Positions 2,874 to 58,157 of a stretch of DNA of 64,000 bases are shown here, in pieces (positions within the stretch are counted from its first letter, which is position 1; each line of letters begins with the position of its first letter). The notes under the pieces were generated by a model. That model was not told the origin of the DNA and did not search any database. It saw only the letters and a list, made by a program, of their open reading frames with translations. The DNA lies in the IMG/VR virus record IMGVR_UViG_3300032236_002285, positions 124,001 to 188,000 of that record; one strand, given 5' to 3'. The position numbers and the translations under genes are program-made.

Positions 2874-3473
2874 ATGAATATATGGTTTACATCTGATACA
2901 CACTTTGGTCATACAAATATTGCGGGTCCTAAAGTTTCTAACTGGAAATCTGGTTATAGAGATTTTAACTCTGTTCATGAAATGAATATGGCTTTGGTTG
3001 AAGGTATCAATAAATATGTTAAAGAAGATGATATTCTCTATCATCTTGGTGATTGGAGCTTTGGGGGAGTTCATAATATTTTACAATTTAGAAATTATAT
3101 TGTCTGTAAAAATATACACCTGATTTTAGGTAATCATGACCAGCATATAACTGACAAGGAAATAAAGTATCATGATACTTCATTTAATCCAATTCAGCTT
3201 TTTTCATCAGTCCAAGATGTTTTACACTTGAAGTTGGGTAAAACTGAGTTGTTTCTTTCTCACTATTCTCATCGTGTTTGGTTAGGTAGTCATAAAGGTG
3301 TTATACATCTTTATGGTCACTCACATGGTTCAATTCCTGACTATGGAAAATCAATGGATGTTGGAGTTGATGTTGCTTTTAAGAGATTTGGTGAGTATCG
3401 TCCATTTAATATTGGTGACATAACAAACATTATGTCTAAAAGAGAAGTAGAAAAAATAGACCACCATGGATAG
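2874..3473 (+). CDS. calcineurin-like metallophosphoesterase
   Basis: SDTHFGH, LGDWSFG, GNHD, HGHSH motifs; likely ATG at 2874. Confidence 0.9.
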   Translation: MNIWFTSDTHFGHTNIAGPKVSNWKSGYRDFNSVHEMNMALVEGINKYVKEDDILYHLGDWSFGGVHNILQFRNYIVCKNIHLILGNHDQHITDKEIKYHDTSFNPIQLFSSVQDVLHLKLGKTELFLSHYSHRVWLGSHKGVIHLYGHSHGSIPDYGKSMDVGVDVAFKRFGEYRPFNIGDITNIMSKREVEKIDHHG

Positions 3474-3636
3474 TTTATATAATAGATTATCTATTCTAAA
3501 GATGATTCTTAATTCGAGTTATGGTGAAGGTAAGACCGTAACTAATGTATATGAGGAATCTTATAAAATAAGAAAAAAGATACACTCAATAAAAACTAGA
3601 AAAGAAAAAATTAAACGAATATTCTATTTGAAATAG
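3466..3636 (+). CDS. 56-aa micro-protein: PolB motif-B-like segment plus RKEKIKRIF helix
   Basis: Not in ORF track; manual translation MDSLYNRLSILKMILNSSYGEGKT...KTRKEKIKRIFYLK*; start overlaps upstream stop (ATGGATAG). Confidence 0.7.
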   Translation: MDSLYNRLSILKMILNSSYGEGKTVTNVYEESYKIRKKIHSIKTRKEKIKRIFYLK

Positions 3637-3656
3637 AAAAATAAAACAAGACTATC

Positions 3657-4526
3657 ATGAACGATGTGAAAGGATTTTGTAAGTTAATGGATATCAGTGT
3701 TCCGGATTACGAACACTTTGATTATTATATCCATCAACTATCAAAAACAGAAAAGTGGAAAAATATTTACGACCTTATTAAACTATTTGAAGACGCTGAA
3801 AGTAAATACGGTGATCTTTACGAATATCGTTTTAAGAAGGCAAATGAAATTATTGAATTTTTAAAAACAACAAGAGCTTATAATGAGCTTCAAGATGATA
3901 ATTTATTACCTGACTATCCAACAACTAAAAACTTTGAGTATTCAGATGATAAAAAATACATTTCTATTGATATTAGAAAGGCAAACTGGGTGGTTCTTAA
4001 AAAATATGACCCAGAGTTTGCACCGGAATTAGGAAATTCATATGAAGACTTTATAGCTAAATTTGATGTACCTGAAATATTCAATCATTCAAAACAATTA
4101 AGGCAGTTTATCTTTGGTAATATCAATCCAAAAAGACAAGGTAAAGCACAAAGAGTTATTATTGAGAGTTTACTGAATAAATATAAACACCTCAATTTAG
4201 AAATTGCTTGTATAAAAAATGATGAGGTTATTTATTCTTTTGATAGCTTTGAAAAAATTGAAGAAATCTTAAATACAATTGATAAAGATTTATTTAAAAC
4301 TAAACTTTTTATCGTTGAAAGAATAAAAGATTTTCGAATCAATACATACTTATCTGAAAAAGGTGAGAAATTACATAGAGAAATGGTAGGATGTAATGGT
4401 AATTTATTTTTCTTATATTTAAAGAAGTATGTGTTGAATGAGCCGATTGATATAAGAGATTTATATTTTAAAATGGATGGTAACCTAGCTATCTGGAATG
4501 TTGAAGGTTTAAAAGTAAGTCTGTAA
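3657..4526 (+). CDS. hypothetical protein
   Basis: 289-aa ORF; ISIDIRKANW and IKNDEVIY segments, function not recognised. Confidence 0.75.
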   Translation: MNDVKGFCKLMDISVPDYEHFDYYIHQLSKTEKWKNIYDLIKLFEDAESKYGDLYEYRFKKANEIIEFLKTTRAYNELQDDNLLPDYPTTKNFEYSDDKKYISIDIRKANWVVLKKYDPEFAPELGNSYEDFIAKFDVPEIFNHSKQLRQFIFGNINPKRQGKAQRVIIESLLNKYKHLNLEIACIKNDEVIYSFDSFEKIEEILNTIDKDLFKTKLFIVERIKDFRINTYLSEKGEKLHREMVGCNGNLFFLYLKKYVLNEPIDIRDLYFKMDGNLAIWNVEGLKVSL

Positions 4527-4528
4527 TT

Positions 4529-4786
4529 ATGTCTTTGTTGGTCAATGTTTATTATGGTGAAGATAAAAATCTTGTAGAATCTTTCTCAATTGAAATAGGA
4601 AGAAAAGTAACATCAATAGATGATGCTAGATTGTTGATAATTGAACATTTAGATAGTTTTTATTTTGATGTTAAATATAAAATAAATGTATTTTCATCTT
4701 TTGATGGTGATACAAGTATTAACTTAAATTTTGAAAAAGATATTTGTTTAAATAGAGAACTCTTAATAAGAAAAATATTAGAATGA
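4529..4786 (+). CDS. hypothetical protein, C-terminal RELLIRKIL helix
   Basis: 85-aa ORF in tight operon. Confidence 0.7.
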   Translation: MSLLVNVYYGEDKNLVESFSIEIGRKVTSIDDARLLIIEHLDSFYFDVKYKINVFSSFDGDTSINLNFEKDICLNRELLIRKILE

Positions 4787-5882: not shown

Positions 5883-6280
5883 TAATAAGCTTTGATTTTG
5901 ATGGAACTTTAGTAGATGAGTTTGGTGGTCACCCATCAAATAGTCAAAAAGAAGAAATTCAAGGACTCGCTAAGAAGTATATTAGTTTAGGACATGAAGT
6001 AATTATTATTACTAAACGATTTGGTCCAGAAAATGCAGATAAAGGTATCAAAAATGAACATTTAGAAGTTCAACATCTGGCTAATAAGTTGGGTATTCAA
6101 AAGGTTTACTTTACTAATCGTGAAATGAAATTTTCATATATTATTAACTTGAAAGTTGATAGACATTTTGAAAATGATGATTATGAGGTTTCTTTAATTA
6201 ATCAGGTTTGTAAAGAAAAAGGCCACAACTGTTTAGTTGTTCCGGTAGAAGACCCTTATTGGAGAGATTTAATATATTAA
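5879..6280 (+). CDS. HAD-superfamily phosphatase-like
   Basis: SFDFDGTL motif I, IIITKR motif II, HFEND. Confidence 0.7.
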   Translation: MIISFDFDGTLVDEFGGHPSNSQKEEIQGLAKKYISLGHEVIIITKRFGPENADKGIKNEHLEVQHLANKLGIQKVYFTNREMKFSYIINLKVDRHFENDDYEVSLINQVCKEKGHNCLVVPVEDPYWRDLIY

Positions 6281-6282
6281 AA

Positions 6283-6654
6283 ATGAATAAAACAAATTTT
6301 ATAGAGTTTATTAAAGAGTTAGGATTTGCGCAAGTTTGGCAGACAAATCCTAACTATTTTAGTTTAACAACTGACGTGATTGGTCTCGCTAATCAAAATT
6401 ATCAAGCTTTTTGTGACCAATTAAACGTTCATCTTGATGATGAAAATGAATTGGCACAATTATCACTCTCACAACTGAGTACTCATACGAGTGCTGGTAA
6501 AAGTTTTGGTAGATTTGACTTAAAAACATTTGGTGAACCAGGTGATTTTCAGATGCAGATCTTTATGAGTTTTGTGAAAGGTGCTTTTAAGAATCCACCA
6601 AATAATATAATTCAATATATGAGAGATAAAAAAATCAAAAGTATTCTAAAATAA
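6283..6654 (+). CDS. hypothetical protein, C-terminal RDKKIKSIL helix
   Basis: ORF track 6259..6654; likely ATG 6283. Confidence 0.7.
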   Translation: MNKTNFIEFIKELGFAQVWQTNPNYFSLTTDVIGLANQNYQAFCDQLNVHLDDENELAQLSLSQLSTHTSAGKSFGRFDLKTFGEPGDFQMQIFMSFVKGAFKNPPNNIIQYMRDKKIKSILK

Positions 6655-6679: not shown

Positions 6680-7066
6680 ATGAATTATGATCAAGAAATA
6701 ATAATTATAGAAATGACACCTTTTATATTTGAAGATGGTAATACTTACTATTTTAAAATAGTTAAAAGAGGTTCTTCTAATGATTATCATGATCTTTTTG
6801 TTTATGAAAAAATCAAAACAGAAACCAAAAATATCTTTGGTAGAGTAAAAATTGATGAGTGTTTCAATAAGATAAACAAAAGTCCTGAGCTCGTATCTAC
6901 AAGTTTAGATACGAATGAAATTAAAAGAAATATTAAAAAAATATTGATTGCTACTAAAGCTAACCACCGATTAAAAAATTGGGATGGTTTTGTTGGTGAC
7001 ATACCTAATGATGTTAAAACGGCTCTTAAAAGAGAGAGTTCTTTGAAAAACATTTTAGGTGAATAA
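6680..7066 (+). CDS. hypothetical protein, C-terminal RESSLKNIL helix
   Basis: 128-aa ORF. Confidence 0.7.
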   Translation: MNYDQEIIIIEMTPFIFEDGNTYYFKIVKRGSSNDYHDLFVYEKIKTETKNIFGRVKIDECFNKINKSPELVSTSLDTNEIKRNIKKILIATKANHRLKNWDGFVGDIPNDVKTALKRESSLKNILGE

Positions 7067-8023: not shown

Positions 8024-8440
8024 ATGCCTTTACCTTTTTCCAATAATTTAAATTCTGCTGTTAATACATCAATACCTATAGCAATGATGTATCAAGGAGA
8101 AGAAAAAATTGAAATAAATTTAGACCATCCTATTTTTGTAGTTTATGTTAATACTAAAAATGTAAGTCCTCAAGTAGCTGAGGAGCATTTATATAAAACA
8201 AAAAAGATGTTTGATATCTATAAAAACATTACCGTTTGGGTTTTATCTTCTGATGAAAACAAAGTTGAATGTGTTTATGATGGTCAGTGTAGACAAAGAG
8301 ATATGGAAATAAGTGACTTAATAAAAGAAATAAATACAAGAATTGACATTATGTCTAAATCAAACTCTTTTGAAGATTTCAAAATTAACATTAGGGATTG
8401 GCGAATAAATGAACTTGTAAATGGCTCTAAAGAAGAATAA
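8024..8440 (+). CDS. hypothetical protein, C-terminal RDWRINELV helix
   Basis: 138-aa ORF. Confidence 0.7.
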   Translation: MPLPFSNNLNSAVNTSIPIAMMYQGEEKIEINLDHPIFVVYVNTKNVSPQVAEEHLYKTKKMFDIYKNITVWVLSSDENKVECVYDGQCRQRDMEISDLIKEINTRIDIMSKSNSFEDFKINIRDWRINELVNGSKEE

Positions 8441-37382: not shown

Positions 37383-38136
37383 TAAACAAAACAAAGGTTC
37401 AAGAGGAACCCAGAGTATCAGCAAAAATTATAGTTTGACTACATCAGACTCAGCTACATTTAGTTATGAACAAGGTAATAACTTATTTAGTCAACAATTA
37501 GCTAGTAAAGGTATTACATTTAGTTCAATGACTGAATCTGTACCTAGAACACCTAAAGGTAAAACTCAAAGTGATTACAAGGGTTCTACATTCTCATATG
37601 ATAAGAATTTATATTTGAGAACTAAGGAAAATACACCTCAAACTTTTACTTATAGTTTACAAAAAGGAACTCAAAGTCATGGTGTTACACCAAGTCATAA
37701 TCCTTTAAATTTTACTAAAAATACTTTATCATTTAGTAAGAAAACTACAACTACTGGTTATAGAGCATTCAGAGAAGGAGTGGGTACTCAAAGTCATTTT
37801 GAAGTTAAAACTCAAATGCTTAGAAGTACACCAAGTAACTTTTATGTAGCTGGAACCGTAAGTGCTGCTTTTAGTAGACCAAGTATTAAGAAGTTTTATA
37901 TAAAAACTACAGATACAACACCTAAGTTAGATGCTAAATCTCTTGCTGAATTTGTTTCAACTTTATCTAAAACAACAACTGAAGAAGCCACTAAATCAAT
38001 AAAACTAAATAAAGTAACGGTTAATGGGAATTTAGTTACAGATCCTAATCACACGCTTGTTTCGGGTGATGTTGTTAGAGTTGGTTCGGTAGGACACTAT
38101 GTAAATAACAATGAAGGGATAGCAATAGTAAAATAA
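37375..38136 (+). CDS. basic repeat protein with C-terminal S4-like RNA-binding domain
   Basis: C-term EEATKSIKLNKVTVNGNLVTDPNHTLVSGDVVRVG; internal GTQS and TFSY repeats. Confidence 0.6.
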   Translation: MTNKQNKGSRGTQSISKNYSLTTSDSATFSYEQGNNLFSQQLASKGITFSSMTESVPRTPKGKTQSDYKGSTFSYDKNLYLRTKENTPQTFTYSLQKGTQSHGVTPSHNPLNFTKNTLSFSKKTTTTGYRAFREGVGTQSHFEVKTQMLRSTPSNFYVAGTVSAAFSRPSIKKFYIKTTDTTPKLDAKSLAEFVSTLSKTTTEEATKSIKLNKVTVNGNLVTDPNHTLVSGDVVRVGSVGHYVNNNEGIAIVK

Positions 38137-38137
38137 C

Positions 38138-38167
38138 AAAAAAAGAGAGTTTTTAACTCTCTTTTTT
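38138..38167. terminator. bidirectional intrinsic terminator
   Basis: AAAAAAGAGAGT-TTTTA-ACTCTCTTTTTT. Confidence 0.85.
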
Positions 38168-39230
38168 ATTTTACCAATGAAACAAATTCTTCAAACTTAT
38201 AATTTGGAAAATCATTAACATATTTAATACTTACATTAATTTCCACACCAAGTGCCGATTTTATTGTTGATATTAATGACTCTTCTTTTTCCAATAAAGG
38301 TTTTGATATTACTTCTACAATTAAATCTTCAATTGAAGTTTGAGTCATCTTAAACCTTTTTATACCATATTCTTCATGAATATCTCTTGTTCCAAGTAAA
38401 GGCCATTTTTTATCACCATTTGGTAGTACAAACATATTTCTTACTCTACCTTTTATTTCGGTTATTGTTTGTAAAGTTCTACCACAATTACATTCACCTA
38501 ATTCAATATGGTCACCATGTTTATATCTTTTAATATAAGGATTAGTTAAACTGGTTACAATTAATCCGCCATCTTCATCAACCTCACAAATTATATTTTC
38601 CATAACATGTTTTACATTTGGATTATCTGGGCACTCAATAGCTATTGTACCACATTCTTCAGATGAGTATAAAGACCCACCCATTTCACCACTTCCTTTA
38701 ATATCAATAATATTTAATTTACTTAAATCCAATTGTTTTACAATTGAAGGGTTACAATGTAAGTAATCAGGATTCTTTTCTTCCAACCATTTTTGTATAA
38801 CTGAAATAGGTTCATAACCTATCTTAAATGTTTTGCCTTGTATTGGTTCTATATTTCTTGGTATACCCCAATCATTGGTATCTATTGTTTTAGAACCAGG
38901 TCTTATAATAGCTATGTTTTTAGTAACATCCCATTTACGCCATCTTATTTCTCTTATATTTGTAGCTAAATACCATACATAATCTAAATAAGACTTTTGT
39001 ATAGTAACTGGTTCACCGGTGGACCCAGATGTTTTAGACATGTAATAACCTTTTTCCATTTCAATCTTTCTAAGATCCTGTCTGGATATAATAGGCATTT
39101 TATTTATTAGAAAAAAGTTTGGTTTATGCCTCCATTGAGTTTTTTCAAAACCGTCTAAAACCCTTTTAACATCAATATCTAACTTAGAATTCCCAGACAT
39201 AGAATGTATATTCGTTGAAGACTTCAACAT
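38166..39230 (-). CDS. phenylacetate-CoA ligase/CapK-like adenylate-forming (ANL) enzyme
   Basis: TSGSTGEP, YSSEECG, RYKHGD, GRVRNMF motifs; start may be ATG 39200. Confidence 0.8.
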   Translation of the reverse strand: MLKSSTNIHSMSGNSKLDIDVKRVLDGFEKTQWRHKPNFFLINKMPIISRQDLRKIEMEKGYYMSKTSGSTGEPVTIQKSYLDYVWYLATNIREIRWRKWDVTKNIAIIRPGSKTIDTNDWGIPRNIEPIQGKTFKIGYEPISVIQKWLEEKNPDYLHCNPSIVKQLDLSKLNIIDIKGSGEMGGSLYSSEECGTIAIECPDNPNVKHVMENIICEVDEDGGLIVTSLTNPYIKRYKHGDHIELGECNCGRTLQTITEIKGRVRNMFVLPNGDKKWPLLGTRDIHEEYGIKRFKMTQTSIEDLIVEVISKPLLEKEESLISTIKSALGVEINVSIKYVNDFPNYKFEEFVSLVK

Positions 39231-39630
39231 GATTTGGTTTTATTGAGAAGTCTGATTCTTTTGGAAAATTAGCAGCTATTCTCATTTTATCTAATTTATA
39301 ATTAAATGACCTAACTATAAATCTTTTACAATATTTAGAAGCCATTTTTAATAAATTTTCTTGTAGCTCTTTTGTAAAATTAACAACACCATCACCTATT
39401 ATATTATCATAGTAGGTTTTATTATCAGACCAATCACCTATTATCATAGTATCTGATTTATACATAGGGTCTATATCCATCTGATTATCGGTAAATGGTA
39501 TAAGTTTTTTGGTATAACCTAATAGTAATGTAGTACCATTAGTCATATACTTTCTATAAGTATTAACATTCTCTTCAGATGGGCCGTATGGATAAGGAAA
39601 TTCTTGAGCCCAATAACTATTTTCTATCAT
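39184..39630 (-). CDS. small class I methyltransferase-like fold protein
   Basis: TLLLG, MDIDP, IIGDW, IIGDGV pattern, degenerate. Confidence 0.45.
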   Translation of the reverse strand: MIENSYWAQEFPYPYGPSEENVNTYRKYMTNGTTLLLGYTKKLIPFTDNQMDIDPMYKSDTMIIGDWSDNKTYYDNIIGDGVVNFTKELQENLLKMASKYCKRFIVRSFNYKLDKMRIAANFPKESDFSIKPNHVEVFNEYTFYVWEF

Positions 39631-39660
39631 TAAATTTATAAAACTAAAAGTATTAAAAGT

Positions 39661-40395
39661 TTACTTAAATTTAGATTTGATATCATCAAGATCTTTCATT
39701 CTACTTTCATGTGTAGCACTTAACAAAGTATAACTACTTGAGTAAGTACCAGCTGAATATGTTCCGTGTGTATTACCATAAATATCAATAACTTCATAAT
39801 TATCAATAATAATAGCATAACCACCTCTATCAAGAGTTAATGGCGCACTTAAAGTATTCATTCTATTAAAAGGTCTAGAAGTTGAATCTGGACTAAACCA
39901 ATTAGGTAAAACATAATCAGACAAACCAACCTTAATATTACCTGCTAATGTATAAACTATTAAATTACTTTCAACTGGGTCACAAAGTTCAGCCGCCCAG
40001 AAAATACCATTATTATCTAAACACCATTTATTAACTACATTATTACCCATCATCTCTAATAACTCATGACATACACATTGAGCAACGGTAAATGTTGAAT
40101 TATCTTTATAAAGAACAGCACCACCATAATTCAATATTGTTTTAGCAAATACTTTAGCATAAGCTCTGCCAGATGTTTCATCATGATAACCTAAAGCACC
40201 TGGGTAATCAGTAAGATCCATTAAAAATATACTATTGTTTGGATAGTTTCTACCAGTACCTATAACTAATTGTGTAGGTGCCAATCCCCAATCATTACAA
40301 ACATTTGTAAGAAATGAATTTATAGCTTTAACCATATTTTGTAGATTAGTTGTATTAACAACCGTGCTTTGATTGAATATTGTATAGTTTATCAT
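39661..40395 (-). CDS. zincin-like metalloprotease candidate
   Basis: ALGYH, CHELLEM, ELCDPV; canonical HExxH not intact. Confidence 0.45.
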   Translation of the reverse strand: MINYTIFNQSTVVNTTNLQNMVKAINSFLTNVCNDWGLAPTQLVIGTGRNYPNNSIFLMDLTDYPGALGYHDETSGRAYAKVFAKTILNYGGAVLYKDNSTFTVAQCVCHELLEMMGNNVVNKWCLDNNGIFWAAELCDPVESNLIVYTLAGNIKVGLSDYVLPNWFSPDSTSRPFNRMNTLSAPLTLDRGGYAIIIDNYEVIDIYGNTHGTYSAGTYSSSYTLLSATHESRMKDLDDIKSKFK

Positions 40396-41779: not shown

Positions 41780-42214
41780 ATGGAAAAACCAAGTAAAGAA
41801 GATATAATGAAAAAATGGGCTCCTGTTTTAGAGTCTATGGGTATGACTGGATCTCAATTGGATAATTTATCACAACTAACCGAAAATCAACCAAATCAAA
41901 TATTAGAAGAAACTAAAACTGAAGAGTTTCCAAGTTTATTACCAATAGCTATGAGGGTAGCCGCTAGAACAATATCAAATGATTTAATATTTGCTTCACA
42001 AGAAGAAATTGACCAAGTTAAAAAGAAAGTTCAATCTGAAAATCGTGATGGTAAGATTGAAGCCATTATAGAAGATAAAGAATTTACTGAGAAGAAATTA
42101 GAAGATGATGAAGAGTATAAGGAATTGATGAAAAAAGGTGTTAAACCTATGTCGGCACCTTCAGGAACTTTATTCTATTTAGATTATAAGTATGGAGGAG
42201 ACAAAGATGAGTAA
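41780..42214 (+). CDS. mini protein resembling the N-terminal part of a T4 gp23-type major capsid protein
   Basis: KEDIMKKWAPVLESMG, LLPIAMRVAARTI, KPMSAPSGTLFYLDYKYG; about 144 aa; internal RDGKIEAII helix. Confidence 0.7.
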   Translation: MEKPSKEDIMKKWAPVLESMGMTGSQLDNLSQLTENQPNQILEETKTEEFPSLLPIAMRVAARTISNDLIFASQEEIDQVKKKVQSENRDGKIEAIIEDKEFTEKKLEDDEEYKELMKKGVKPMSAPSGTLFYLDYKYGGDKDE

Positions 42215-42392
42215 ATATGTAAGTCCTGGAGTTTATATTAAAGAAACTGATTGGAGTGGTATTTATCCAGTATTTCAAAGAAATCTTTTAAGAAAGAATA
42301 AAATAGCTAAAATCTTTGGTTTAGATGTTAGATCGCTTATTATAACTTCAACTCCAAAAGGTCCAAATAATTTTCCAATTATTGCTTGGTGA
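42207..42392 (+). CDS. 61-aa chimera: tail-sheath N-terminal motif, RKNKIAKIF helix, terminase motif-III-like segment
   Basis: MSKYVSPGVYIKETD...LRKNKIAKIFG...LIITSTPKGPNNF; ATG 42207 overlaps upstream stop (ATGAGTAA). Confidence 0.7.
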   Translation: MSKYVSPGVYIKETDWSGIYPVFQRNLLRKNKIAKIFGLDVRSLIITSTPKGPNNFPIIAW

Positions 42393-42794: not shown

Positions 42795-43061
42795 ATGGGT
42801 TCAATGAAAGAAATAGCAATTAGAGATTATATTTCTAAAATAGACTTCAAGCACGATGATTGGAAGCTTTCTCAATTAAAAGAAGACATGCGTAGATTCT
42901 TAGGTGAAGAACCAGGAATTGAAGTTGTTTATAAAAAAGATGTAATGGTGAATGAAGTATCCGGAGAATCTAAAGAATTCTTAGATATTGATAAAATTCA
43001 AATTGTATTCACTGATACAGATGACAGATTTAAAAAAATAGAATTTACATTAGGTGTTTAA
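42795..43061 (+). CDS. hypothetical protein
   Basis: 88 aa, AATATATA 42770-42777 upstream. Confidence 0.75.
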   Translation: MGSMKEIAIRDYISKIDFKHDDWKLSQLKEDMRRFLGEEPGIEVVYKKDVMVNEVSGESKEFLDIDKIQIVFTDTDDRFKKIEFTLGV

Positions 43062-43284
43062 TATGAATTTTGAAAATTACTACTTAGATATACAAAAAAT
43101 ATCTCAAATACCTTCACTTGAAGATAGGGACCAAATACATAGATACTATATGGATATGCTTATTTTTTTTACTGATGGTTCTGGTAGAGAAAAAGTATCA
43201 CAATCAATTATGAAAACACTTATCAAATCTGGGTATTTAATTGATTCTCGTGATGAAAAATTAGGTGAATTGTTAAATGGATAA
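43054..43284 (+). CDS. hypothetical protein, C-terminal RDEKLGELL helix
   Basis: 76-aa ORF containing IFFTDGS. Confidence 0.65.
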   Translation: MFNMNFENYYLDIQKISQIPSLEDRDQIHRYYMDMLIFFTDGSGREKVSQSIMKTLIKSGYLIDSRDEKLGELLNG

Positions 43285-43675: not shown

Positions 43676-45424
43676 ATGTTAATTAGTGAATTAGGAATTA
43701 GAGGATTCAAGTCTTATGGCAATAACGAACAAGTATTAAAATTAAACACAGAAAAAGGAGAATTAATTCTCCTTGTTGGAAATAATGGAGCTGGTAAATC
43801 ATCTCTTTTAGATTCCTTCGATTACACACTTTATGGTAAAGTTAGAGGTCGTAAAAAGAAATGGGCCACTTTATCAACACTTCCAAACAGAATTAACGGT
43901 GAATTACTTAATAGAATTAAATTTAATTCTTTAGGTACCGACGTTGAAATCAAACGTGGTATTTCACCAAGCGTATTAGAACTCATTGAAAATGGAGTAA
44001 CCAATGAAAGAGCTGGTAAAGGAAACATTGATGAAAAGATTGAAAAGTATATCGGTATGGATATTGAAACTTTCAAATCATTTATCTCAATGTCTATCAA
44101 TGACTTCAAAAACTTTATCTCTTTATCAAATGAAGAAAAACAACTTCTTTTAGACAAGTTATTTAACTTAGAAGTTATCAATATATTAAATGGTATCTTA
44201 AAAGATATTGCTAAGAGTAATAAAACCAAAGCCGCTTCTTTTGATGCTGAAATTAGAACTTTAGATGACTCTATAGCTTCTATTCAAAGGTCTATTGATA
44301 AAGCCATTGAAAGACAAAAAGAAGAAGCCAGACTAGCCTTAGAACGTGAAAAAGAAGATATTCAATCAGAGATTGATAGAATCACAAATGAGATGAATTC
44401 CAGAAAAGATGATTATAAGTCTTTGAAAGAAAAGATGGATAAAATCAAAGAAAAAGATTCTGAACTTTCTGATGAGATGGATAAAGAAAAAAGACAACTT
44501 ATCAACTGTCAGAATGATATTAAGAATGTTCAAAAAGAATTAGATTTGTATGATTCTGGTAAATGTCCAACTTGTAAAACAGATTTTGATTCAGTTCACT
44601 TTGCTAATTTAAGAACGGCTTTAGAAGAAAAGAAATTAGGCTTTGAAAATATCAAAGCTGAAATTGAAGCCAATGTTACTAAAGTAAGAGAAAGGCAAGC
44701 TAAGTTAAAATCTTTATCAGAAACTACAACAACTACTTTTAATGATTTAAGTTATTTATTGAAGAATTATAAATCAGAGATTGATAAATTAACTCAAAAG
44801 AAAGCTAGTCAAACTGCACCGGTTAATACTACACCTTCTGTCGATATTCAAGAGTTTAAAAATACAATTGATGAACTTGAAGAAAAGAAAGTCATCAGTA
44901 CTGATAAAATTACTGAGTGTAAAGAAAAAGATCTTTACTACAAAGAGTTAAATAGAATTTTTGGTGAAGATGGTGTTAAGAAATCTATCATTTCTGGTAT
45001 TATCAAACCAATCAATCACTTTATTGCTGAGAATATCAAAAAGATGGGTTTACCATTTGAAGTTAAGTTAGATGAGACTTTTACAGCTGAGATTAAACAA
45101 TTAGGTTCTCAAATTGAACACGATTCTTTATCAACTGGTGAAACTAAAAAAGTAAATATTAGTATCTTAATTGCTTACTTGAAATTGATTAGAACTAAAC
45201 GTCATATCAATATTCTCTTCTTAGACGAGGTTTTCTCATCTATTGATATAGAAGGTATAGATTCTATTTTAGCACTCTTAAAATCGTTTGCAAACGATTA
45301 TAACATCAATATCTTTGTTGTTCACCATGCTATTTTGAATCAAGAGATGTTTGATAGAATATTGAAGATTAACAAAGAAGTCTTTTCTTCAATAGAAGAA
45401 GTAAATCTTAACTATGGAAATTAA
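43676..45424 (+). CDS. SbcC/Rad50/gp46-like SMC ATPase
   Basis: GNNGAGKS Walker A, long coiled coil, CPTC zinc hook, LSTGE signature, LFLDE Walker B, VVHH. Confidence 0.92.
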   Translation: MLISELGIRGFKSYGNNEQVLKLNTEKGELILLVGNNGAGKSSLLDSFDYTLYGKVRGRKKKWATLSTLPNRINGELLNRIKFNSLGTDVEIKRGISPSVLELIENGVTNERAGKGNIDEKIEKYIGMDIETFKSFISMSINDFKNFISLSNEEKQLLLDKLFNLEVINILNGILKDIAKSNKTKAASFDAEIRTLDDSIASIQRSIDKAIERQKEEARLALEREKEDIQSEIDRITNEMNSRKDDYKSLKEKMDKIKEKDSELSDEMDKEKRQLINCQNDIKNVQKELDLYDSGKCPTCKTDFDSVHFANLRTALEEKKLGFENIKAEIEANVTKVRERQAKLKSLSETTTTTFNDLSYLLKNYKSEIDKLTQKKASQTAPVNTTPSVDIQEFKNTIDELEEKKVISTDKITECKEKDLYYKELNRIFGEDGVKKSIISGIIKPINHFIAENIKKMGLPFEVKLDETFTAEIKQLGSQIEHDSLSTGETKKVNISILIAYLKLIRTKRHINILFLDEVFSSIDIEGIDSILALLKSFANDYNINIFVVHHAILNQEMFDRILKINKEVFSSIEEVNLNYGN

Positions 45425-45701
45425 TAATCTAATAATTGAATATTTAGAAACAAGATATAATAAAGTTATTAATATCAAGCGTCAAAATTATGATATGGCG
45501 GCTAATTTTAGAGATCTAGAAAGAGAGTTGTCTATTAAGATATTTAGAATTATTAAAGGTGATTATAATGATTTGAATTATAAACAATCAGAAGATGAAA
45601 TTGGTAATTATTGCTTAAAAGAATTTAATTGTAGTATTTATGATTATAATTGTATAAAAGCGATTAAGCGACATATAAAATTAAAGGATTTAGGAATATA
45701 A
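45414..45701 (+). CDS. small protein with UVR (ClpC/UvrB-type) coiled-coil motif and RHIKLKDL helix
   Basis: KRQNYDMAANFRDLEREL. Confidence 0.6.
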   Translation: MEINNLIIEYLETRYNKVINIKRQNYDMAANFRDLERELSIKIFRIIKGDYNDLNYKQSEDEIGNYCLKEFNCSIYDYNCIKAIKRHIKLKDLGI

Positions 45702-45744: not shown

Positions 45745-47154
45745 TTAGCAGTCGTAACAATCTACTGTTCCTCTACCACTACAATTATCACATTCTACTG
45801 TACCATCTCCGTTACATTCTGGACAATCTGTTTCATTTCCCTCTTCATCTTCAATGTGACCTAATCCTTCACAATTTGAACAATCAACACTTCCATCTCC
45901 ACCACAATCGTCACATTCCATTCTACCCGTTCCGCCGCAAGTATCACAAGGTCTAACATAGTCACCACCTGTATCTTCTAAGAAATAACAACCACCAGTA
46001 TCTTCACTTGAAATAGTTTTTTTACGAGGATTGAAATATTTAAGTGTATCTAAGTAAGGGAAATTATCCATACTAGCATCAGTTAAATTAACCGTTAAAT
46101 CTAAATTAACTCTACTTCCATCCGGTGCTACAGCTTGATTACTATCTGAACTATTATTATATTCTTTATAATACCAACCATTTTCTTTAGCATAATCTCT
46201 GAATAATTGAACATCTGAATCATTTACCGTATAAACTCTGTCTAAGAATTCTTTACCATCTCTTAACTTCCAAAGTAAAGCTCTACCAACAATTTTTTCA
46301 GTATCATCCATTGATTTGTAAATAACTAAACCAACTTCTGGATTAGCAGTGTAAACTTCTAACCAACTATCTGGAGCACCAGCCATACAAGACGAACCTA
46401 AAGTCCCACTTCTTTGATAATAATTTGAGTTATGATACCAGTGAGCAATATCAGAACCCCTAACAACTTCAAAGTAAGAGAATTTATCATTCATCTTATC
46501 AATAGTAGCTTTATATAAATTTACAAATTGTTCAAAATCTCTATCAGCAAATGTAGTAATACCAGCAGCTCTTAAAAGTGCTCTCATAGCTCTACCTACT
46601 TTTACTTCTTGTCTGTTTGTTGACCAAACTTTTTTAATTCTCTCATCAACAGCTCTTATCTTTTCAACATTATAAACACCTTGACCAACATCATTACCTG
46701 ATTGGTCTTTGAATTTAACCCAAGCATAAGTTTTACCTGATTGTTCAGATGTTACTCTAGCAATAACCTCACCTAAATCTGTAGATTGTGGTTTATAAGG
46801 CTCAGAGCCTTCTTCAAATGTATAACCTAGTTGAGTAAATAATTTTGCATTTGAATCTTTGTGTTTTAACCAACCACCACCAGAACCGATAAATCTAACT
46901 ACTTCTTTAGTATCACCTAAAATCTCTTGAGCTTTTCTATCAGGAGTAAAAGTAATTGTATCGTTTTTTGTGAACTCAATATCAAGGTAATTAGCTTGAA
47001 CATTGTAGTCATTATTTTCAGCATCTAAAATAGCTTTCGCTACAGGGCTGTCAATCTTAGTCATTGCTTTTCTGAAGTTATCGGAATAAACAACATTAGA
47101 TTCTAGAATAAATTCTAGGTTTTCGTTTATAAAATCTGAATATTTTTTAATCAT
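45745..47154 (-). CDS. SCM/RALLW/PYLDT family protein with capsid-targeting-like N-terminus and C-terminal CxxCxGxG zinc finger
   Basis: MIKKYSDFINE; LGSSCM, GRALLW, FLDRVY, FPYLDT; six CxxC units at C-terminus. Confidence 0.8.
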   Translation of the reverse strand: MIKKYSDFINENLEFILESNVVYSDNFRKAMTKIDSPVAKAILDAENNDYNVQANYLDIEFTKNDTITFTPDRKAQEILGDTKEVVRFIGSGGGWLKHKDSNAKLFTQLGYTFEEGSEPYKPQSTDLGEVIARVTSEQSGKTYAWVKFKDQSGNDVGQGVYNVEKIRAVDERIKKVWSTNRQEVKVGRAMRALLRAAGITTFADRDFEQFVNLYKATIDKMNDKFSYFEVVRGSDIAHWYHNSNYYQRSGTLGSSCMAGAPDSWLEVYTANPEVGLVIYKSMDDTEKIVGRALLWKLRDGKEFLDRVYTVNDSDVQLFRDYAKENGWYYKEYNNSSDSNQAVAPDGSRVNLDLTVNLTDASMDNFPYLDTLKYFNPRKKTISSEDTGGCYFLEDTGGDYVRPCDTCGGTGRMECDDCGGDGSVDCSNCEGLGHIEDEEGNETDCPECNGDGTVECDNCSGRGTVDCYDC

Positions 47155-47184
47155 TTTCAACTATGTTATATTTTAAGATATAAG

Positions 47185-47224: not shown

Positions 47225-47413
47225 ATGCTAGAAATTAAAGTAGAAGGTGTTGGTATTGAAAAAGCCTTAAAAACACTTAAAAGAAAATTTGACAAAACTA
47301 AAACTCTTAGACAATTAAGAGATAGAAAAGAATTTGTTAAAAAATCAGTTAAAAGAAGAGCTGAAATAAACAAAGCTAAATATGTTCAAGAAAAGTTTGG
47401 TAACAACGATTAA
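47225..47413 (+). CDS. rpsU: 30S ribosomal protein bS21
   Basis: IEKALKTLKRKFDKTKTLRQLRDRKEFVKKSVKRR...KAKY resembles Bacteroidota bS21. Confidence 0.92.
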   Translation: MLEIKVEGVGIEKALKTLKRKFDKTKTLRQLRDRKEFVKKSVKRRAEINKAKYVQEKFGNND

Positions 47414-47693
47414 GAATTTATTCAGTGATAATCAAAGAACATTTGATTTAGGTAAACTACAAAAGGTTGGTTTTATAAAACCTTTAGAAGATCTATCTGG
47501 TTGTCCTAATTGTAAAAGTAAAAACATATCTTGGAAGTTCTTTATACCAGTAGATGGCTCAAAACCTACACAACCATCTTTATCTATCTGTAAAGATTGT
47601 GGATATCAAGATATAAGAGGTGAATTTGAAAAAACAAACAAATCATTACTTAGAGAAAAGAAAATTAATAAGATATTAGATGGGATTCAATAA
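47382..47693 (+). CDS. zinc-ribbon protein with REKKINKIL helix
   Basis: CPNC...CKDC. Confidence 0.7.
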   Translation: MFKKSLVTTIKNLFSDNQRTFDLGKLQKVGFIKPLEDLSGCPNCKSKNISWKFFIPVDGSKPTQPSLSICKDCGYQDIRGEFEKTNKSLLREKKINKILDGIQ

Positions 47694-47895
47694 GAGATAT
47701 ATTAATAAAGATAGTTTATTATCAGCCGCTTCTAATGGCTTAGATTATTTAATTAACTATGTAGTTAAGCCAGATGCTCTTATTATAGAGTCAGATGGTA
47801 TATCACATCAAATTTGTGATATTGTTGGTCTTACAAAGGACAAAAGTGAGATGAAGAAAAAATTAAAAGAAATAGGATTCTATGAATTTGAATAA
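47680..47895 (+). CDS. hypothetical protein
   Basis: 71 aa, overlaps both neighbours. Confidence 0.7.
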   Translation: MGFNKRYINKDSLLSAASNGLDYLINYVVKPDALIIESDGISHQICDIVGLTKDKSEMKKKLKEIGFYEFE

Positions 47896-48592
47896 AAATT
47901 ATTATGCTATTCTTGGAGTTGATAATAACTCTGATGAAAAGACTATTAAAAAAGCTTATTATAAATTATCATTTACACATCACCCTGATAAGAATGGCGA
48001 TCCTATAGTTTTTGGTGAAATGACCGAGGCATATGATGTTCTTTGTTCTGATAAAAGAAAAGATTATGATGTTAAAAGTAGATTTGGTAACAACTATAAC
48101 GAATATTTTGAGTTATTTGATATTAAAATAGACTTTGACTATACTAAGGAAAAATCTAACTATGAAAAATTTAAGAAAAATGAGGTATTGGATATCTATA
48201 TTAACATAGATGAGACTTTTGATGGCACCTTAGAATATGAAAGATGGGTTAAATGTAAAACTTGTGATGGTACTGGTAAGGATCTTTCCGCTAAAATTGT
48301 TATTAAAGACAATGATGGTAATATTATAAAAACTTTTGACGCTGATGATGGTTGTGATTTCTGTGAAGGTTCTGGTAAAGACTATAAAGGAGATGATTGT
48401 AATTTCTGTCAGGGTAAGGGTAAAGTAGGTTTAACACCTTGTAAAAAATGTAATGGAGAAAAAAGAATTTTAGGAAAGCAAAAGTTATCTGGTATTAAAT
48501 TAACCGGAGATGAAACTAAAATAGAATCCATGGGTAATTGCTCTAAAGATATAGCTGGTATGGTTGGTTATCTTTTATTAAAAAAGAGTTAA
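47882..48592 (+). CDS. dnaJ: DnaJ-like co-chaperone (J domain plus zinc finger, truncated C-terminus)
   Basis: NYYAILGV...KKAYYKL...HPDKN; four CxxCxGx repeats. Confidence 0.85.
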   Translation: MNLNKNYYAILGVDNNSDEKTIKKAYYKLSFTHHPDKNGDPIVFGEMTEAYDVLCSDKRKDYDVKSRFGNNYNEYFELFDIKIDFDYTKEKSNYEKFKKNEVLDIYINIDETFDGTLEYERWVKCKTCDGTGKDLSAKIVIKDNDGNIIKTFDADDGCDFCEGSGKDYKGDDCNFCQGKGKVGLTPCKKCNGEKRILGKQKLSGIKLTGDETKIESMGNCSKDIAGMVGYLLLKKS

Positions 48593-56237: not shown

Positions 56238-56972
56238 ATGCAAAAGAAAAAGATATTGATTTTTACCGGAGCTGGAGTTTCTGCTGAAAGTGGCGTTGCT
56301 ACTTTTAGAACAGGAGATGATGGGCTTTGGTATAATCACAAAGTAGAAGATGTTGCCACACCTGGTGGATGGCGTAGAGATAGAGAAAAAGTTCTTAATT
56401 TCTACAATATGAGACGTGCTCAACTTAAAGATGTTGAGCCAAACATAGCGCATAAAATAATTACCGATTTAGAAAAAGATTATGATGTTACTGTTGTAAC
56501 TCAGAATGTTGATGATTTACATGAAAGAGCTGGTTCAACAAATATAATTCATCTACACGGTGAATTAACAAAAGCAAGAGGTTGTATGTATGAACATAAA
56601 TCATCTGCTTTAGATAGTATTATTGATATAGGTTACGAACCGATTAAAATTGGTGATAAGTGTCCAACAACTGGTTCACAATTAAGACCTCATATTGTTT
56701 GGTTTGGAGAAGGATTAGATCAATCTGATATAGACAGAGCATCAGCAGCTGCTAATGATTGTAATATTTGTATTATTGTTGGTACTTCAATGCAAGTAGC
56801 ACCGGCTAATACTATTCCATTTTTAACAAAAGAATCAACTAACATTTACTATGTAGATCCATCTGATGCTGATTTTTATGTAGCAGAATATAGAAAAGAA
56901 CTCTTCCACCACTATCAAGAACTAGCATCAACTGGAATGGTAAAAGTTATAGAAGATATAAAAAAATTATAA
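56238..56972 (+). CDS. cobB: Sir2 family NAD-dependent deacylase
   Basis: GAGVSAESG, TFR, QNVDDLHERAG, HLHG, LRPHIVWFGE, VGTSMQV. Confidence 0.93.
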   Translation: MQKKKILIFTGAGVSAESGVATFRTGDDGLWYNHKVEDVATPGGWRRDREKVLNFYNMRRAQLKDVEPNIAHKIITDLEKDYDVTVVTQNVDDLHERAGSTNIIHLHGELTKARGCMYEHKSSALDSIIDIGYEPIKIGDKCPTTGSQLRPHIVWFGEGLDQSDIDRASAAANDCNICIIVGTSMQVAPANTIPFLTKESTNIYYVDPSDADFYVAEYRKELFHHYQELASTGMVKVIEDIKKL

Positions 56973-56974
56973 TT

Positions 56975-57247
56975 ATGAAAAAGGAATATTACAGTTACGA
57001 TTGTTACAAGTCCGCTTCATCATATGGTGATTTTATTAAGTCATTAGGCACATATACCTATGATGATGAAACTGACTCTATCGAATATAATGGTTATATT
57101 GATAGTTCTAGTGTTTATTCAGATTTAACAAGTCAAATAATGAAGTACTATAAAGATAGAGAAACACCTGAACAAAAAGCTATCCGTGAAGCTAAAGAAA
57201 AAGCTGAAAAAAGAAATAATACTATTAATCAAATTTTAGGTGAATAA
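56975..57247 (+). CDS. hypothetical protein, C-terminal RNNTINQIL helix
   Basis: 90-aa ORF. Confidence 0.7.
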   Translation: MKKEYYSYDCYKSASSYGDFIKSLGTYTYDDETDSIEYNGYIDSSSVYSDLTSQIMKYYKDRETPEQKAIREAKEKAEKRNNTINQILGE

Positions 57248-57810
57248 TGTCACATATATCAATTATTGATTGGATTACGGCTTTACTAATAGCATTGCCT
57301 TTATTTACTTTGTTTATTTCAATTCCAAGTTTTGTTGCTATGTATAAACTTGGTTTCAAAGCTTATCGTCAACAACTTCGTGTTTTGAAAATTATGAATC
57401 GTAAGATATCAAGTGGTTATAAAGTCATACATAATCAAGTTTATACATATGCTGGAACGGGTTATAATGTGCCAAATACAGTAACTAGAGTTGAAACTAA
57501 TCATTTTTTCCCAATTGTTATTGATAAAGACCATTTAATAATCTTAACAAAGAAGGAAGGACCTTTCAATACACTTTATATGCAATATTGTGAATTTAAA
57601 AATAAAGAATGGTCAAATGACAATATTGAAATAAAAACTTCAACTTGTTTATTTACTCAACTTCTTAATGATAGATTTCAAAAAAAAGTTGATAATCTTA
57701 TGAAAGAATCTGTTCAAATTGAAGGTGTTGAAAATCTAAACGAGTTATTAAATAGCCAAATAACTTCTATCAAAAGAGAAGAAGTATTAAATTCTATATT
57801 AAATGGATAA
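57247..57810 (+). CDS. membrane-anchored hypothetical protein, C-terminal REEVLNSIL helix
   Basis: N-terminal TM segment. Confidence 0.7.
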   Translation: MSHISIIDWITALLIALPLFTLFISIPSFVAMYKLGFKAYRQQLRVLKIMNRKISSGYKVIHNQVYTYAGTGYNVPNTVTRVETNHFFPIVIDKDHLIILTKKEGPFNTLYMQYCEFKNKEWSNDNIEIKTSTCLFTQLLNDRFQKKVDNLMKESVQIEGVENLNELLNSQITSIKREEVLNSILNG

Positions 57811-57976
57811 GAAAGATATTGTTATAGTAGATTATTTTACTAAACTAACAACTACTGAGCTTTCTGATGATGGTATTGAGGCATTTCGGAAATTAAACTT
57901 TCGTGTTTTAAATATTCGCAAGTGGAGAGGAAAAATAGAAAGACGAAAAGAAAAAATTAAAAGAATCTATGGATAA
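57803..57976 (+). CDS. 57-aa micro-protein: SF4 helicase Walker-B-like segment plus RKEKIKRIY helix
   Basis: Not in ORF track; manual translation MDKKDIVIVDYFTKL...IERRKEKIKRIYG*; ATGGATAA overlaps at both ends. Confidence 0.7.
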   Translation: MDKKDIVIVDYFTKLTTTELSDDGIEAFRKLNFRVLNIRKWRGKIERRKEKIKRIYG

Positions 57977-58157
57977 CAGAGACGTTATTGAAATCTTTGG
58001 TCAATTACTTAATAGTAATAAAGAAATTATGATGTTGAATTCTAGACAAACTGGTAAATCATCATCAGCGGCTCTTGTTAACTGGAGAAAAACATTTGAT
58101 AAGTATAATCGTGCTCAAGATAGAAAAGAAACCATAAAACGACTTTTTAATATATAA
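57969..58157 (+). CDS. 62-aa micro-protein: terminase Walker-A-like segment plus RKETIKRLF helix
   Basis: IMMLNSRQTGKS...DRKETIKRLFNI. Confidence 0.7.
   Translation: MDNRDVIEIFGQLLNSNKEIMMLNSRQTGKSSSAALVNWRKTFDKYNRAQDRKETIKRLFNI

What the first reader, a model, noticed from the sequence alone, without database searches (positions are those of the whole stretch)
3466..58157. Candidate decoy/mimic system: micro-proteins made of isolated core-gene signature motifs fused to a shared R-x-x-K-I-x-x-I helix
Seen: six short intact ORFs each carry the hallmark motif of a different essential protein without the rest of the fold, plus the shared helix. They are PolB motif B (3466), capsid N-terminus (41780), sheath N-terminus plus terminase motif III (42207), UVR (45414), helicase Walker B (57803) and terminase Walker A (57969). 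Several sit in translationally coupled pairs (8-nt overlaps). Established: bacterial immune sensors recognise conserved phage proteins (Avs senses terminase/portal, CapRel senses capsid). Inference: these ORFs are decoys that titrate such sensors, or adaptors that hijack the partners of the mimicked proteins, with the shared helix as a docking or oligomerisation module. I know of no description of such a family.
Basis: partly seen in the sequence, partly recalled or inferred. Interest (0 to 1): 0.92.

Follow-up and report, generated by a model that had tools for sequence, protein, structure and literature searches.

The report
Phage micro-proteins: core-protein snippets plus shared tail
A huge bacteriophage encodes conserved 35-150-residue proteins, each joining a short copy of one of its own essential proteins to a common basic end-helix that is a variant of a tail carried by about one in eight of the phage's proteins, which suggests an undescribed tagging system whose partner is unknown.

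Summary
The six ORFs are real, intact and conserved. The window is standard-code DNA (29% GC, 97% coding) from a huge phage syntenic with LR745206.1 (634 kb).

**Core-protein pieces**
- B copies the capsid protein N-terminus.
- C copies the tail-sheath N-terminus. Its 'terminase motif III' is really the sheath 'KGPxNxP' stretch.
- D copies the UVR segment of a phage ClpC-like ATPase.
- A and F carry exact PolB motif B and terminase Walker A signatures. These stay invariant across 24 and 63 homologues.
- E's helicase Walker B match is not significant.

**The shared helix**
- It is a protein-level motif, and it is a C-terminal tail in every carrier except C, where it is internal.
At least nine of them carry a core-protein piece.

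**Function**
My best reading is tail-tethered mimic peptides docking on one hub. The hub candidates are the sliding clamp or the phage's Clp machinery. The immune-decoy idea is untested. I found no prior description.

The parts
3466..3636 (+). ORF A, 56 aa. N-terminal helix with a PolB motif-B-like stretch (LYNRLSILKMILNSSYG), then a long basic helix ending in the tail RKEKIKRIF (nt 3598-3624).
   Evidence: There are 24 homologues at 69-89% identity with K12, N16 and G20 invariant. It is absent from the syntenic site of LR745206.1. AF2 predicts helices 2-16 and 23-54 (pLDDT 80).
41780..42214 (+). ORF B, 144 aa. A paralogue of the first ~120 residues of the gp23-type major capsid protein, with an inserted charged segment and no tail.
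   Evidence: It is conserved in LR745206.1 (45% identity) and LR756502.1.
42207..42392 (+). ORF C, 61 aa (66 aa from the ATG at 42192). A copy of tail-sheath residues ~4-48, interrupted by a ~15-residue insert carrying RKNKIAKIF (nt 42291-42317).
   Evidence: The PGVY..E start is shared with the LR756502.1 orthologue. The tail is shared by all three orthologues.
45414..45701 (+). ORF D, 95 aa. A UVR-like segment (NYDMAANFRDLEREL) and a degenerate tail (IKAIKRHIKLKDLGI).
57803..57976 (+). ORF E, 57 aa. DIVIVDY start (Walker-B-like, not significant) and the tail RRKEKIKRIYG (nt 57944-57970).
   Evidence: There are 35 homologues with I6, I8, D10 and the tail invariant.
57969..58157 (+). ORF F, 62 aa. 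Terminase-type P-loop signature (LNSRQTGKS) and the tail DRKETIKRLFNI (nt 58122-58148).
4529..4786 (+). 85-aa protein ending in the general tail (NRELLIRKILE).
6259..6654 (+). 131-aa protein ending in the general tail (MRDKKIKSILK).
6680..7066 (+). 128-aa protein ending in the general tail (KRESSLKNILGE).
8024..8440 (+). 138-aa protein with a weaker tail (IRDWRINELVNGSKEE).
   Evidence: The orthologue in L003 carries it too.
43054..43284 (+). 76-aa protein ending in the general tail (SRDEKLGELLNG).
47382..47693 (+). 103-aa zinc-ribbon-like protein ending in the general tail (LREKKINKILDGIQ).
56975..57247 (+). 90-aa protein ending in the general tail (KRNNTINQILGE).
57247..57810 (+). 187-aa protein ending in the general tail (KREEVLNSILNG). 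It lies directly upstream of E and F.

Best explanation
**Shown**
- The window comes from a huge T4-related phage whose proteome uses a short tail as a common tag; it is C-terminal in every case seen except C. The general form is K-S-x-L-R-[DEN]-x-K-[IL]-x-x-[IL]-L, followed by 0-8 residues.
- About 12% of the proteins of a close relative carry it. Most are small and uncharacterised, the carriers I compared (49 of them) are unrelated to one another upstream of the tail, and none is encoded in the 150-200 kb block that holds the terminase and sheath genes.
- A basic sub-form, R-K-x-K-I-x-x-I-[FY], is confined to micro-proteins of 35-84 residues.
- ORFs A, C, E and F belong to that sub-form. D has a degenerate tail and B has none.
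- Upstream of the tail, many of these micro-proteins carry a short copy of a conserved segment of one of the phage's own large proteins: capsid, sheath, scaffold, PolB, terminase or ClpC-like ATPase.

**Inferred**
- The tail is a docking helix for one shared partner.
- The copied segment gives each micro-protein its specificity. It would compete with, or report on, the interactions of the parent protein, in the manner of the 'microProteins' of eukaryotes.
- Most likely hubs, in order: the phage sliding clamp, the phage-encoded ClpC/ClpP/ClpS machinery, or an unidentified host protein. The clamp ranks first because the conserved PolB C-terminal tail has the same R-x3-V-x2-I-F spacing, and T4 uses such tails on gp43, gp33 and gp55.
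- B is more likely a prohead-targeted protein that uses the capsid protein's own N-terminal region.
For: **The tail**
- It lies within 8 residues of the stop in 120 of 968 proteins of LR745206.1, against 5.35 ± 2.0 by shuffling. In the window plus L001 the count is 16 of 118 against 0.34.
- A position matrix scoring at least 8 finds 162 real proteins and 1 shuffled.
- Arg, Ile and Leu codons vary between copies. The tail also occurs on genes with no co-directional downstream gene.
- Upstream parts are unrelated: 45 clusters from 49 carriers.
- No carrier lies in the 150-200 kb block that holds the terminase and sheath genes.

**The micro-protein sub-class**
- 16 proteins against 1.3 expected, all 35-84 aa.

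**Core-protein pieces**
- BLAST of small against large proteins: 19 real hits of at least 30 bits against 1 for reversed queries.

**Conservation**
- 63, 24 and 35 homologues, with the signature residues and the tail invariant.

**Hub candidates**
- The PolB tail RLSVVMDIF[GS]GF is conserved in 43 relatives.
- The small gene next to PolB ends in RDKKIDDLFDGFDFD.
- T4 gp43, gp33 and gp55 bind the clamp by interchangeable C-terminal tails (PMC2988020).
- The phage encodes ClpP, ClpS and a ClpC-like ATPase.

**Predicted structure**
- AF2 places the tail at the end of a long, confident helix in A and F.
Against: - No binding partner was identified, and no tool here predicts complexes.
- The PolB tail fits the tail matrix only weakly (score 3.4). 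It is hydrophobic and acidic, whereas the micro-protein tail is basic.
- More than 100 clamp ligands in one phage would be unprecedented.
- For A, E and F the similarity to PolB, helicase and TerL is too short for alignment statistics. The evidence for A and F rests on exact signatures and their conservation; E's signature is not enriched over shuffles.
- AF2 models F's P-loop-like stretch as a low-confidence helix, not as a strand-loop-helix.
- No annotated function was found for any large tail carrier except PolB and ClpP, and ClpP's match is its native C-terminus.
Confidence: 0.45

Rival explanations
1. The micro-proteins are decoys that present conserved epitopes of terminase, capsid, sheath, polymerase and helicase to bacterial immune sensors. 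The tail serves to oligomerise the captured sensor or to hand it to another machine, for example the phage Clp protease.
For: - The parent proteins (TerL, capsid, sheath, PolB, helicase) overlap with known triggers of abortive-infection systems. This rests on established knowledge and was not tested here.
- The pieces are conserved and tail-linked.
- The phage encodes its own ClpC-like ATPase, ClpP and ClpS.
Against: - Pieces of 10-50 residues lack the folds that Avs-type sensors recognise.
- A decoy that binds a sensor would be expected to trigger it.
- No defence or anti-defence annotation was found for these ORFs or the neighbours I tested.
- The host and its sensors are unknown.
Confidence: 0.15
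2. The tail is a recognition tag for the phage-encoded ClpC-like/ClpP protease, acting either as a degron or as an adaptor-docking peptide. It would allow timed removal of a large set of non-structural proteins (their expression timing was not examined). The core-like pieces would be incidental.
For: - A ClpC-like ATPase with a UVR motif, ClpP and ClpS are encoded by the relative.
- Carriers are small and uncharacterised, none lies in the 150-200 kb block that holds the terminase and sheath genes, and they make up about 12% of the proteome.
- D mimics the ClpC UVR segment.
Against: - Zero to eight variable residues follow the motif, and in C the motif is internal. That is atypical for C-terminal degrons.
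- PolB carries a related tail.
- There is no direct link between the tail and the Clp genes.
Confidence: 0.15
3. The core-like pieces are by-products of mobile intervening sequences (introns, inteins, homing-endonuclease cassettes) that target conserved motifs and carry exon flanks to new sites. The ORFs persist without a function of their own.
For: - In many IMG/VR relatives the PolB C-half frame is broken just before or inside motif B, and intein ends (…VHN|S/T) sit at motif C.
- A and the following 289-aa ORF are an insertion relative to LR745206.1.
Against: - A-to-PolB DNA identity is only 48%, with 2 of 7 shared codons at identical residues.
- The families are conserved over 50-90% identity with no frameshifts or stops in any homologue retrieved.
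- TerL is uninterrupted in the best 80 relatives.
- No Rfam intron was found.
- The 289-aa ORF has no endonuclease domain.
Confidence: 0.1
4. The motif resemblances are chance matches in small lysine- and isoleucine-rich proteins, noticed because the reader knows many signatures. Only B is a true homologue.
For: - Alignment scores of A, E and F against PolB, helicase and TerL (21-23 bits) lie inside the reversed-query range, which reaches 30.8 bits.
- Column-permuted profiles reach the observed scores in 6/60, 6/60 and 23/60 trials.
- hhalign gives a probability of 6.5% for F against TerL.
- Pfam finds nothing at E ≤ 5.
Against: - Exact signatures are far rarer than observed: 0.000 to 0.105 expected per signature in 62.5 k residues of small ORFs.
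- C and D are significant at proteome level.
Confidence: 0.07

Closest known systems
C-terminal sliding-clamp-binding tails of T4 gp43, gp33 and gp55 (and PIP-box or clamp-binding peptides in general)
   Same: A short peptide at the extreme C-terminus, with Φ-x-x-Φ-Φ spacing, shared by otherwise unrelated proteins to dock on one hub. This clade's PolB C-terminus has a conserved tail with the same spacing.
   Different: - The T4 tails are hydrophobic and acidic and sit on three proteins. Here the tail is basic, has an invariant Arg at -4 and Lys at -1, and sits on more than 100 proteins.
- There is no Gln and no aromatic pair as in PIP boxes.
- Binding to a clamp is untested.
microProteins (miPs) of plants and animals: small proteins derived from one interaction domain of a larger protein that act as competitive regulators
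   Same: They are small, they are homologous to a fragment of a larger protein encoded in the same genome, and they are conserved as separate genes.
   Different: - The pieces here are much shorter (10-120 residues). Several are catalytic-site motifs rather than interaction domains.
- They are fused to a common tail.
- I know of no such class in phages.
T4 prohead-targeted internal proteins and the gp23 N-terminal propeptide
   Same: B and two small proteins of the relative (LR_93266, LR_554784) share the capsid protein's N-terminal region, including the SGMGAVxSAQPxxLAG…GSGD segment.
   Different: - T4 internal proteins use a ~10-residue targeting sequence unrelated to gp23.
- Processing and packaging are untested here.
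Phage anti-defence mimics and sponges (e.g. Ocr DNA mimic, Tad sponges)
   Same: They are small phage proteins proposed to act by mimicry or titration.
   Different: Known examples mimic DNA or bind signalling nucleotides. None is a set of snippets of the phage's own core proteins with a common tail. No homology was found in the Pfam and PHROGs scans; the defence-specific PADLOC library was not searched.

Membership tests
T4-type clamp-binding C-terminal tail | Located at the extreme C-terminus of otherwise unrelated proteins | tested here: met
   Zero to eight residues follow the motif, most often one or two. Upstream parts are unrelated.
T4-type clamp-binding C-terminal tail | Hydrophobic and acidic composition (PMC2988020) | tested here: not met
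   The consensus is K-S-x-L-R-D-x-K-I-N-K-I-L. The micro-protein form, R-K-x-K-I-x-x-I-F, is strongly basic.
T4-type clamp-binding C-terminal tail | Present on the replicative DNA polymerase C-terminus | tested here: inconclusive
   The PolB C-half ends in RRLSVVMDIFGGFK and this is conserved in 43 relatives. It has the same R-x3-Φ-x2-Φ-Φ spacing, but its matrix score is only 3.4.
T4-type clamp-binding C-terminal tail | Binds the phage sliding clamp | not testable with these tools
   No complex prediction or experiment is available. The clamp gene was not located.
PIP box | Q-x-x-[ILM]-x-x-[FY]-[FY] | tested here: not met
   The logo shows Arg at -4, no Gln at -3, and I/L then L/F in place of the aromatic pair.
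microProtein (fragment-derived competitive regulator) | Small protein homologous to part of a larger protein of the same genome | tested here: met
   - B to capsid: E=1e-6, and 1e-19 for the orthologue.
- C to sheath: pairwise E=3e-4.
- D to ClpC-like UVR: pairwise E=3e-4, and 7e-7 for the orthologue.
- A and F rest on exact signatures only.
- E is not significant.

microProtein (fragment-derived competitive regulator) | Acts by binding the parent protein or its partners | not testable with these tools
   This needs interaction assays.
Pseudogene debris of core genes | No conservation of reading frame or residues among relatives | tested here: not met
   The intact families have 24, 35 and 63 homologues of constant length with invariant columns. 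B, C, D, E and F have orthologues in LR745206.1.
DNA-level repeat or regulatory element read as protein | Conservation at nucleotide level with fixed spacing to the next gene | tested here: not met
   Arg is encoded by AGA, CGT, CGA and AGG, and Ile and Leu codons vary. The distance to the next start ranges from -14 to +25 nt. The tail is also present before convergent genes.
Terminase large subunit / PolB / DnaB helicase (as enzymes) | Complete catalytic domain | tested here: not met
   The proteins are 56-62 residues long, Pfam finds nothing at E ≤ 5, and AF2 predicts two helices only.

The most novel reading that the evidence does not exclude
Huge phages of this clade run a proteome-wide addressing system. 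One short tail tethers more than 100 small effectors to a single hub. A dedicated sub-class of 35-84-residue proteins uses the tail to deliver mimic peptides cut from the phage's own capsid, sheath, scaffold, polymerase, terminase and ClpC-like proteins. These could act as decoys for host sensors of those proteins, or as dominant-negative weapons against co-infecting relatives.
Probability: 0.2. Interest if true: 0.9.

Novelty: new variant of a known kind. Interest (0 to 1): 0.75.

Why it matters
- **A handle on unannotated genes.** Most genes of huge phages have no annotation. A tail shared by about 12% of the proteome would let one pull-down assign a common partner to more than 100 unknown proteins.
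- **A class not reported in phages.** As far as I know, micro-proteins built from snippets of a phage's own essential proteins are new. They would be a natural source of peptide inhibitors or mimics of capsid, sheath, terminase and polymerase functions.
- **A testable immune link.** If the decoy reading holds, they would show how phages blunt immune sensors that recognise conserved phage proteins.

Tried and rejected
1. **DNA-level element or translational-coupling signal behind the tail.** Rejected on codon diversity, variable spacing and presence before convergent genes.
2. **One paralogous family.** Rejected, because the upstream parts do not cluster.
3. **Membrane-targeting amphipathic helix of the MinD type.** Set aside: only three hydrophobic positions, with a conserved Arg and Lys and polar residues between.
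4. **Micro-ORFs as missing pieces of split core genes.** Rejected for F, since LR745206.1 has both an intact TerL and F. Rejected for LR_83154, whose neighbours are unrelated. Left open for A, because the PolB of the window's own phage was not seen.
5. **Homing-site mimic at DNA level.** Rejected on 48% nucleotide identity.
6. **The 289-aa ORF beside A as a LAGLIDADG endonuclease.** The only hit was E=0.063. Eight distant homologues have no Pfam domain.
7. **Function of large tail carriers.** No Pfam or PHROG hits.
8. **Profile tests of A, E and F against core proteins.** The top hit is the predicted protein each time, but the scores are not above permuted nulls. hhalign probability for F is 6.5%.
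9. **Literature searches for a description of the tail.** Nothing relevant found.
10. **Rfam search for introns in interrupted PolB loci.** None at gathering score.

Full report
**Setting**

The window has 29% GC and uses the standard genetic code. About 97% of it is covered by 73 non-overlapping ORFs, almost all ending in TAA, and it holds one tRNA-Cys. It is syntenic, gene by gene, with the metagenomic 'uncultured phage' genomes LR745206.1 (634,780 bp) and LR756502.1 (642,428 bp). Records of that size and type are those of the huge-phage study PMC7162821. The window's own contig is 481 kb. Annotated window genes include:
- an SbcC-like nuclease subunit (43676-45424);
- a phosphoesterase (2829-3473);
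- collagen-like tail-fibre proteins;
- a DnaJ (47882-48592);
- a Sir2 protein (56238-56972).

**The six ORFs**

All six are intact. The 8-nt overlaps are real and have the form ATGGATAA, ATGGATAG or ATGAGTAA. These overlaps are why several upstream genes end in '…G-stop' and several of these ORFs begin with 'MD'.

**The shared helix is a proteome-wide C-terminal tail**

Scanning all frames showed that R-x-x-K-I-x-x-I falls almost only in real ORFs, close to their stops. With the looser pattern R-x3-[ILVM]-x2-[ILM]-[LFYI], the counts are:
- 16 of 118 genes of the window plus L001 have it within 6 residues of the C-terminus, against 0.34 ± 0.54 after shuffling each protein;
- 120 of 968 ORFs in the whole of LR745206.1 have it within 8 residues of the stop, against 5.35 ± 2.0;
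- no carrier lies in the 150-200 kb block that contains the sheath and TerL genes (the capsid gene starts just beyond it, at 200.7 kb).

The logo is K(-4) S/Q(-3) x L/I(-1) R(0) D/E/N x K I/L N/K/D x I/L L/F, followed by K, N or D and 0-8 further residues. A matrix built from it scores at least 8 in 162 real proteins and 1 shuffled protein.

The conservation is at the protein level:
- Arg is encoded by AGA, CGT, CGA and AGG, and Ile and Leu codons vary.
- The distance to the next start codon ranges from an overlap of 14 nt to a gap of 25 nt.
- The tail also ends genes that face a convergent neighbour.

The parts upstream of the tail are unrelated to one another. Forty-nine carriers fall into 45 BLAST clusters, and the only multi-member clusters are window/relative orthologue pairs. 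Tail-bearing small genes also occur in the flanks of PolB and TerL loci of IMG/VR relatives.

**A micro-protein sub-class**

All are 35-84 residues long, with a median of 59. By contrast, the 82 proteins with the R-[DEN]…L form have a median length of 110. A, C, E and F belong to this sub-class. D has a degenerate tail (matrix score 10.1) and B has none.

**Core-protein pieces that pass statistics**

- **B.** It aligns with the first ~120 residues of the relative's 560-aa gp23-type capsid protein (shared KKWxPvlEsmGvtG and LLPiAxkiAaqTiGLdLv). It carries an inserted charged segment. BLASTP gives E=1e-6, and 1e-19 for its orthologue.
- **C.** It aligns over residues 5-63 with residues 4-48 of the 1295-aa sheath, with a 15-residue gap that is exactly the RKNKIAKIF insert. 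As a result, 'LIITSTPKGPNNFPI' matches the sheath's 'LIMGVSKKGPVNTPI' and not the terminase. The LR756502.1 orthologue keeps VSPGVYTKEVDISG. The LR745206.1 orthologue keeps only the tail.
- **D.** Its UVR-like stretch matches the UVR motif of a 701-aa ClpC-like double-AAA+ ATPase of the phage (Pfam AAA, AAA_lid_9, UVR, AAA_2, ClpB_D2-small). Identity is 53% over 19 residues, and 71% over 21 for the orthologue, whose proteome-level E is 1e-4.
- **Unbiased comparison.** All 614 small proteins were compared with the 210 proteins of 250 aa or more. Nineteen gave hits of at least 30 bits, against 1 for reversed queries. These include:
  - other capsid pieces (LR_93266 and LR_554784, which share the propeptide segment; LR_255010, which has capsid residues 494-539 plus an RK..F tail; LR_598978);
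  - a scaffold-repeat piece (LR_460435, which has an RK..F tail).

**A, E and F**

Their similarity to PolB, a DnaB-like helicase and TerL is too short for alignment statistics:
- Pairwise E-values are 5e-4 to 5e-3, but at proteome level they lie inside the reversed-query noise.
- Family profiles with the tail removed do rank the predicted protein and motif first among 968 proteins each time: PolB C-half residues 25-44, helicase 311-327 and TerL 101-130.
- Column-permuted profiles reach those scores in 6/60, 6/60 and 23/60 trials. The hhalign probability for F against TerL is 6.5%.

What does stand is the rarity of the exact signatures. Counts in 62.5 k residues of small ORFs:

| Signature | Found in small ORFs | Expected by shuffling |
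|---|---|---|
| [SA]RQxGK[ST] | 2 (F and its orthologue; otherwise only in TerL) | 0.000 |
| Kx3N[SG]xYG | 2 (A and LR_255010) | 0.105 |
| DxxSLYPS (PolB motif A) | 1 (LR_83154, 79 aa, RK..F-like tail; no large ORF matched) | 0.000 |
| Walker-B-like pattern (E) | 1 | 0.33 (not significant) |

The families are strongly conserved:
- F has 63 homologues at 52-94% identity. R26, Q27, G29, K30 and the tail are invariant.
- A has 24 homologues. K12, N16 and G20 are invariant, Y19 is nearly so, and the tail is conserved.
- E has 35 homologues. I6, I8, D10 and the tail are invariant.

At DNA level, A and the relative's PolB share only 48% identity at motif B, so the resemblance is protein-level and old. 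AF2 predicts a short helix followed by a long, confident helix that ends in the tail for both A and F. F's P-loop-like stretch is modelled with low confidence.

**What the tail might bind**

- **Sliding clamp.**
  - The relative's PolB is split. Its 474-aa C-half starts just before motif B and ends in RRLSVVMDIFGGFK.
  - This tail is conserved in 43 IMG/VR relatives. It has the R-x3-Φ-x2-Φ-Φ spacing of the general tail but a low matrix score of 3.4.
  - The small gene next to PolB ends in RDKKIDDLFDGFDFD. From memory, that resembles the RB69 polymerase clamp-binding peptide.
  - In T4, gp43, gp33 and gp55 bind the gp45 clamp through interchangeable C-terminal tails (PMC2988020).
- **Clp machinery.** The phage also encodes ClpP, ClpS and the ClpC-like ATPase, and D mimics the ATPase's UVR segment.
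- **Limits.** None of the large tail carriers has a recognisable domain. The hub is therefore inferred, not shown.

**Alternatives considered**

- **Mobile-element by-products.** In about half of the relatives the PolB C-half frame is broken just before or inside motif B, and inteins sit at motif C. A and the following 289-aa ORF are absent from the syntenic site of LR745206.1. Against this reading:
  - DNA identity is low;
  - the families are conserved;
  - TerL is uninterrupted in the best 80 relatives;
  - no Rfam intron was found;
  - the 289-aa ORF has no endonuclease domain.
- **Chance.** This is untenable for B, C and D and unlikely for A and F. It is possible for E's motif.

**Verdict**

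C has no terminase motif, B has no helix, and the helix is a variant of a tail used by more than 100 proteins. It is untested about the purpose. I found no description of either the tail or the micro-protein class. The nearest known things are T4 clamp-binding tails and eukaryotic microProteins.

Noticed in passing
L017:33567-34991 (-) in LR745206.1; relatives L029-L074: The family-B DNA polymerase is split: a 474-aa C-half begins just before motif B. In about half of 43 IMG/VR relatives the frame is broken by stops immediately before or inside motif B. Some relatives carry intein ends (…ILVHN|S/T) at motif C. A few end in an acidic DDFPW tail instead of RLSVVMDIFGGF. Rfam finds no intron at gathering score.
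   Followed up: partly
LR745206.1 123556-124221 (-), 180414-180695 (-), 423224-425329 (+): The huge phage encodes its own ClpP, ClpS and a 701-aa ClpC-like double-AAA+ ATPase. The ATPase has a UVR motif but no evident N-domain.
   Followed up: partly
window 28268-40395: About 12 kb of genes has no counterpart at the syntenic junction in LR745206.1. It includes collagen-like tail-fibre proteins and a 1679-aa ORF. This looks like a variable host-range module.
   Followed up: no
window 3657-4526 (+): A 289-aa ORF sits beside A and is absent from the syntenic site of the relative. Its family has 959 representative sequences in public data but no Pfam domain.
   Followed up: partly
L021:34153-34392 (LR745206.1 83154-83393, +): A 79-aa ORF holds the only exact DxxSLYPS (PolB motif A) among the ORFs I called in the relative, followed by RRKKKIQKVF. 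Its neighbours are unrelated small genes, and several of those also carry tails. The polymerase N-half was not located.
   Followed up: partly
window 45745-47160 (-) and 47882-48592 (+): A DnaJ (J domain plus CxxCxGxG) and a 471-aa protein rich in CxxCxGxG-like repeats flank ORF D. Together with the Clp genes elsewhere, this suggests a phage-encoded proteostasis set.
   Followed up: no
window 3466, 43054, 43277, 57803, 57969: A recurrent 8-nt stop/start overlap of the form ATGGATAA or ATGGATAG fixes '…G-stop' on the upstream gene and 'MD…' on the downstream one.
   Followed up: partly
LR745206.1 93266-93520 and 554784-555284: Two small proteins share with the capsid propeptide the segment SGMGAVxSAQPxxLAG…GSGD. 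This may be a prohead-targeting or protease-processing signal.
   Followed up: no
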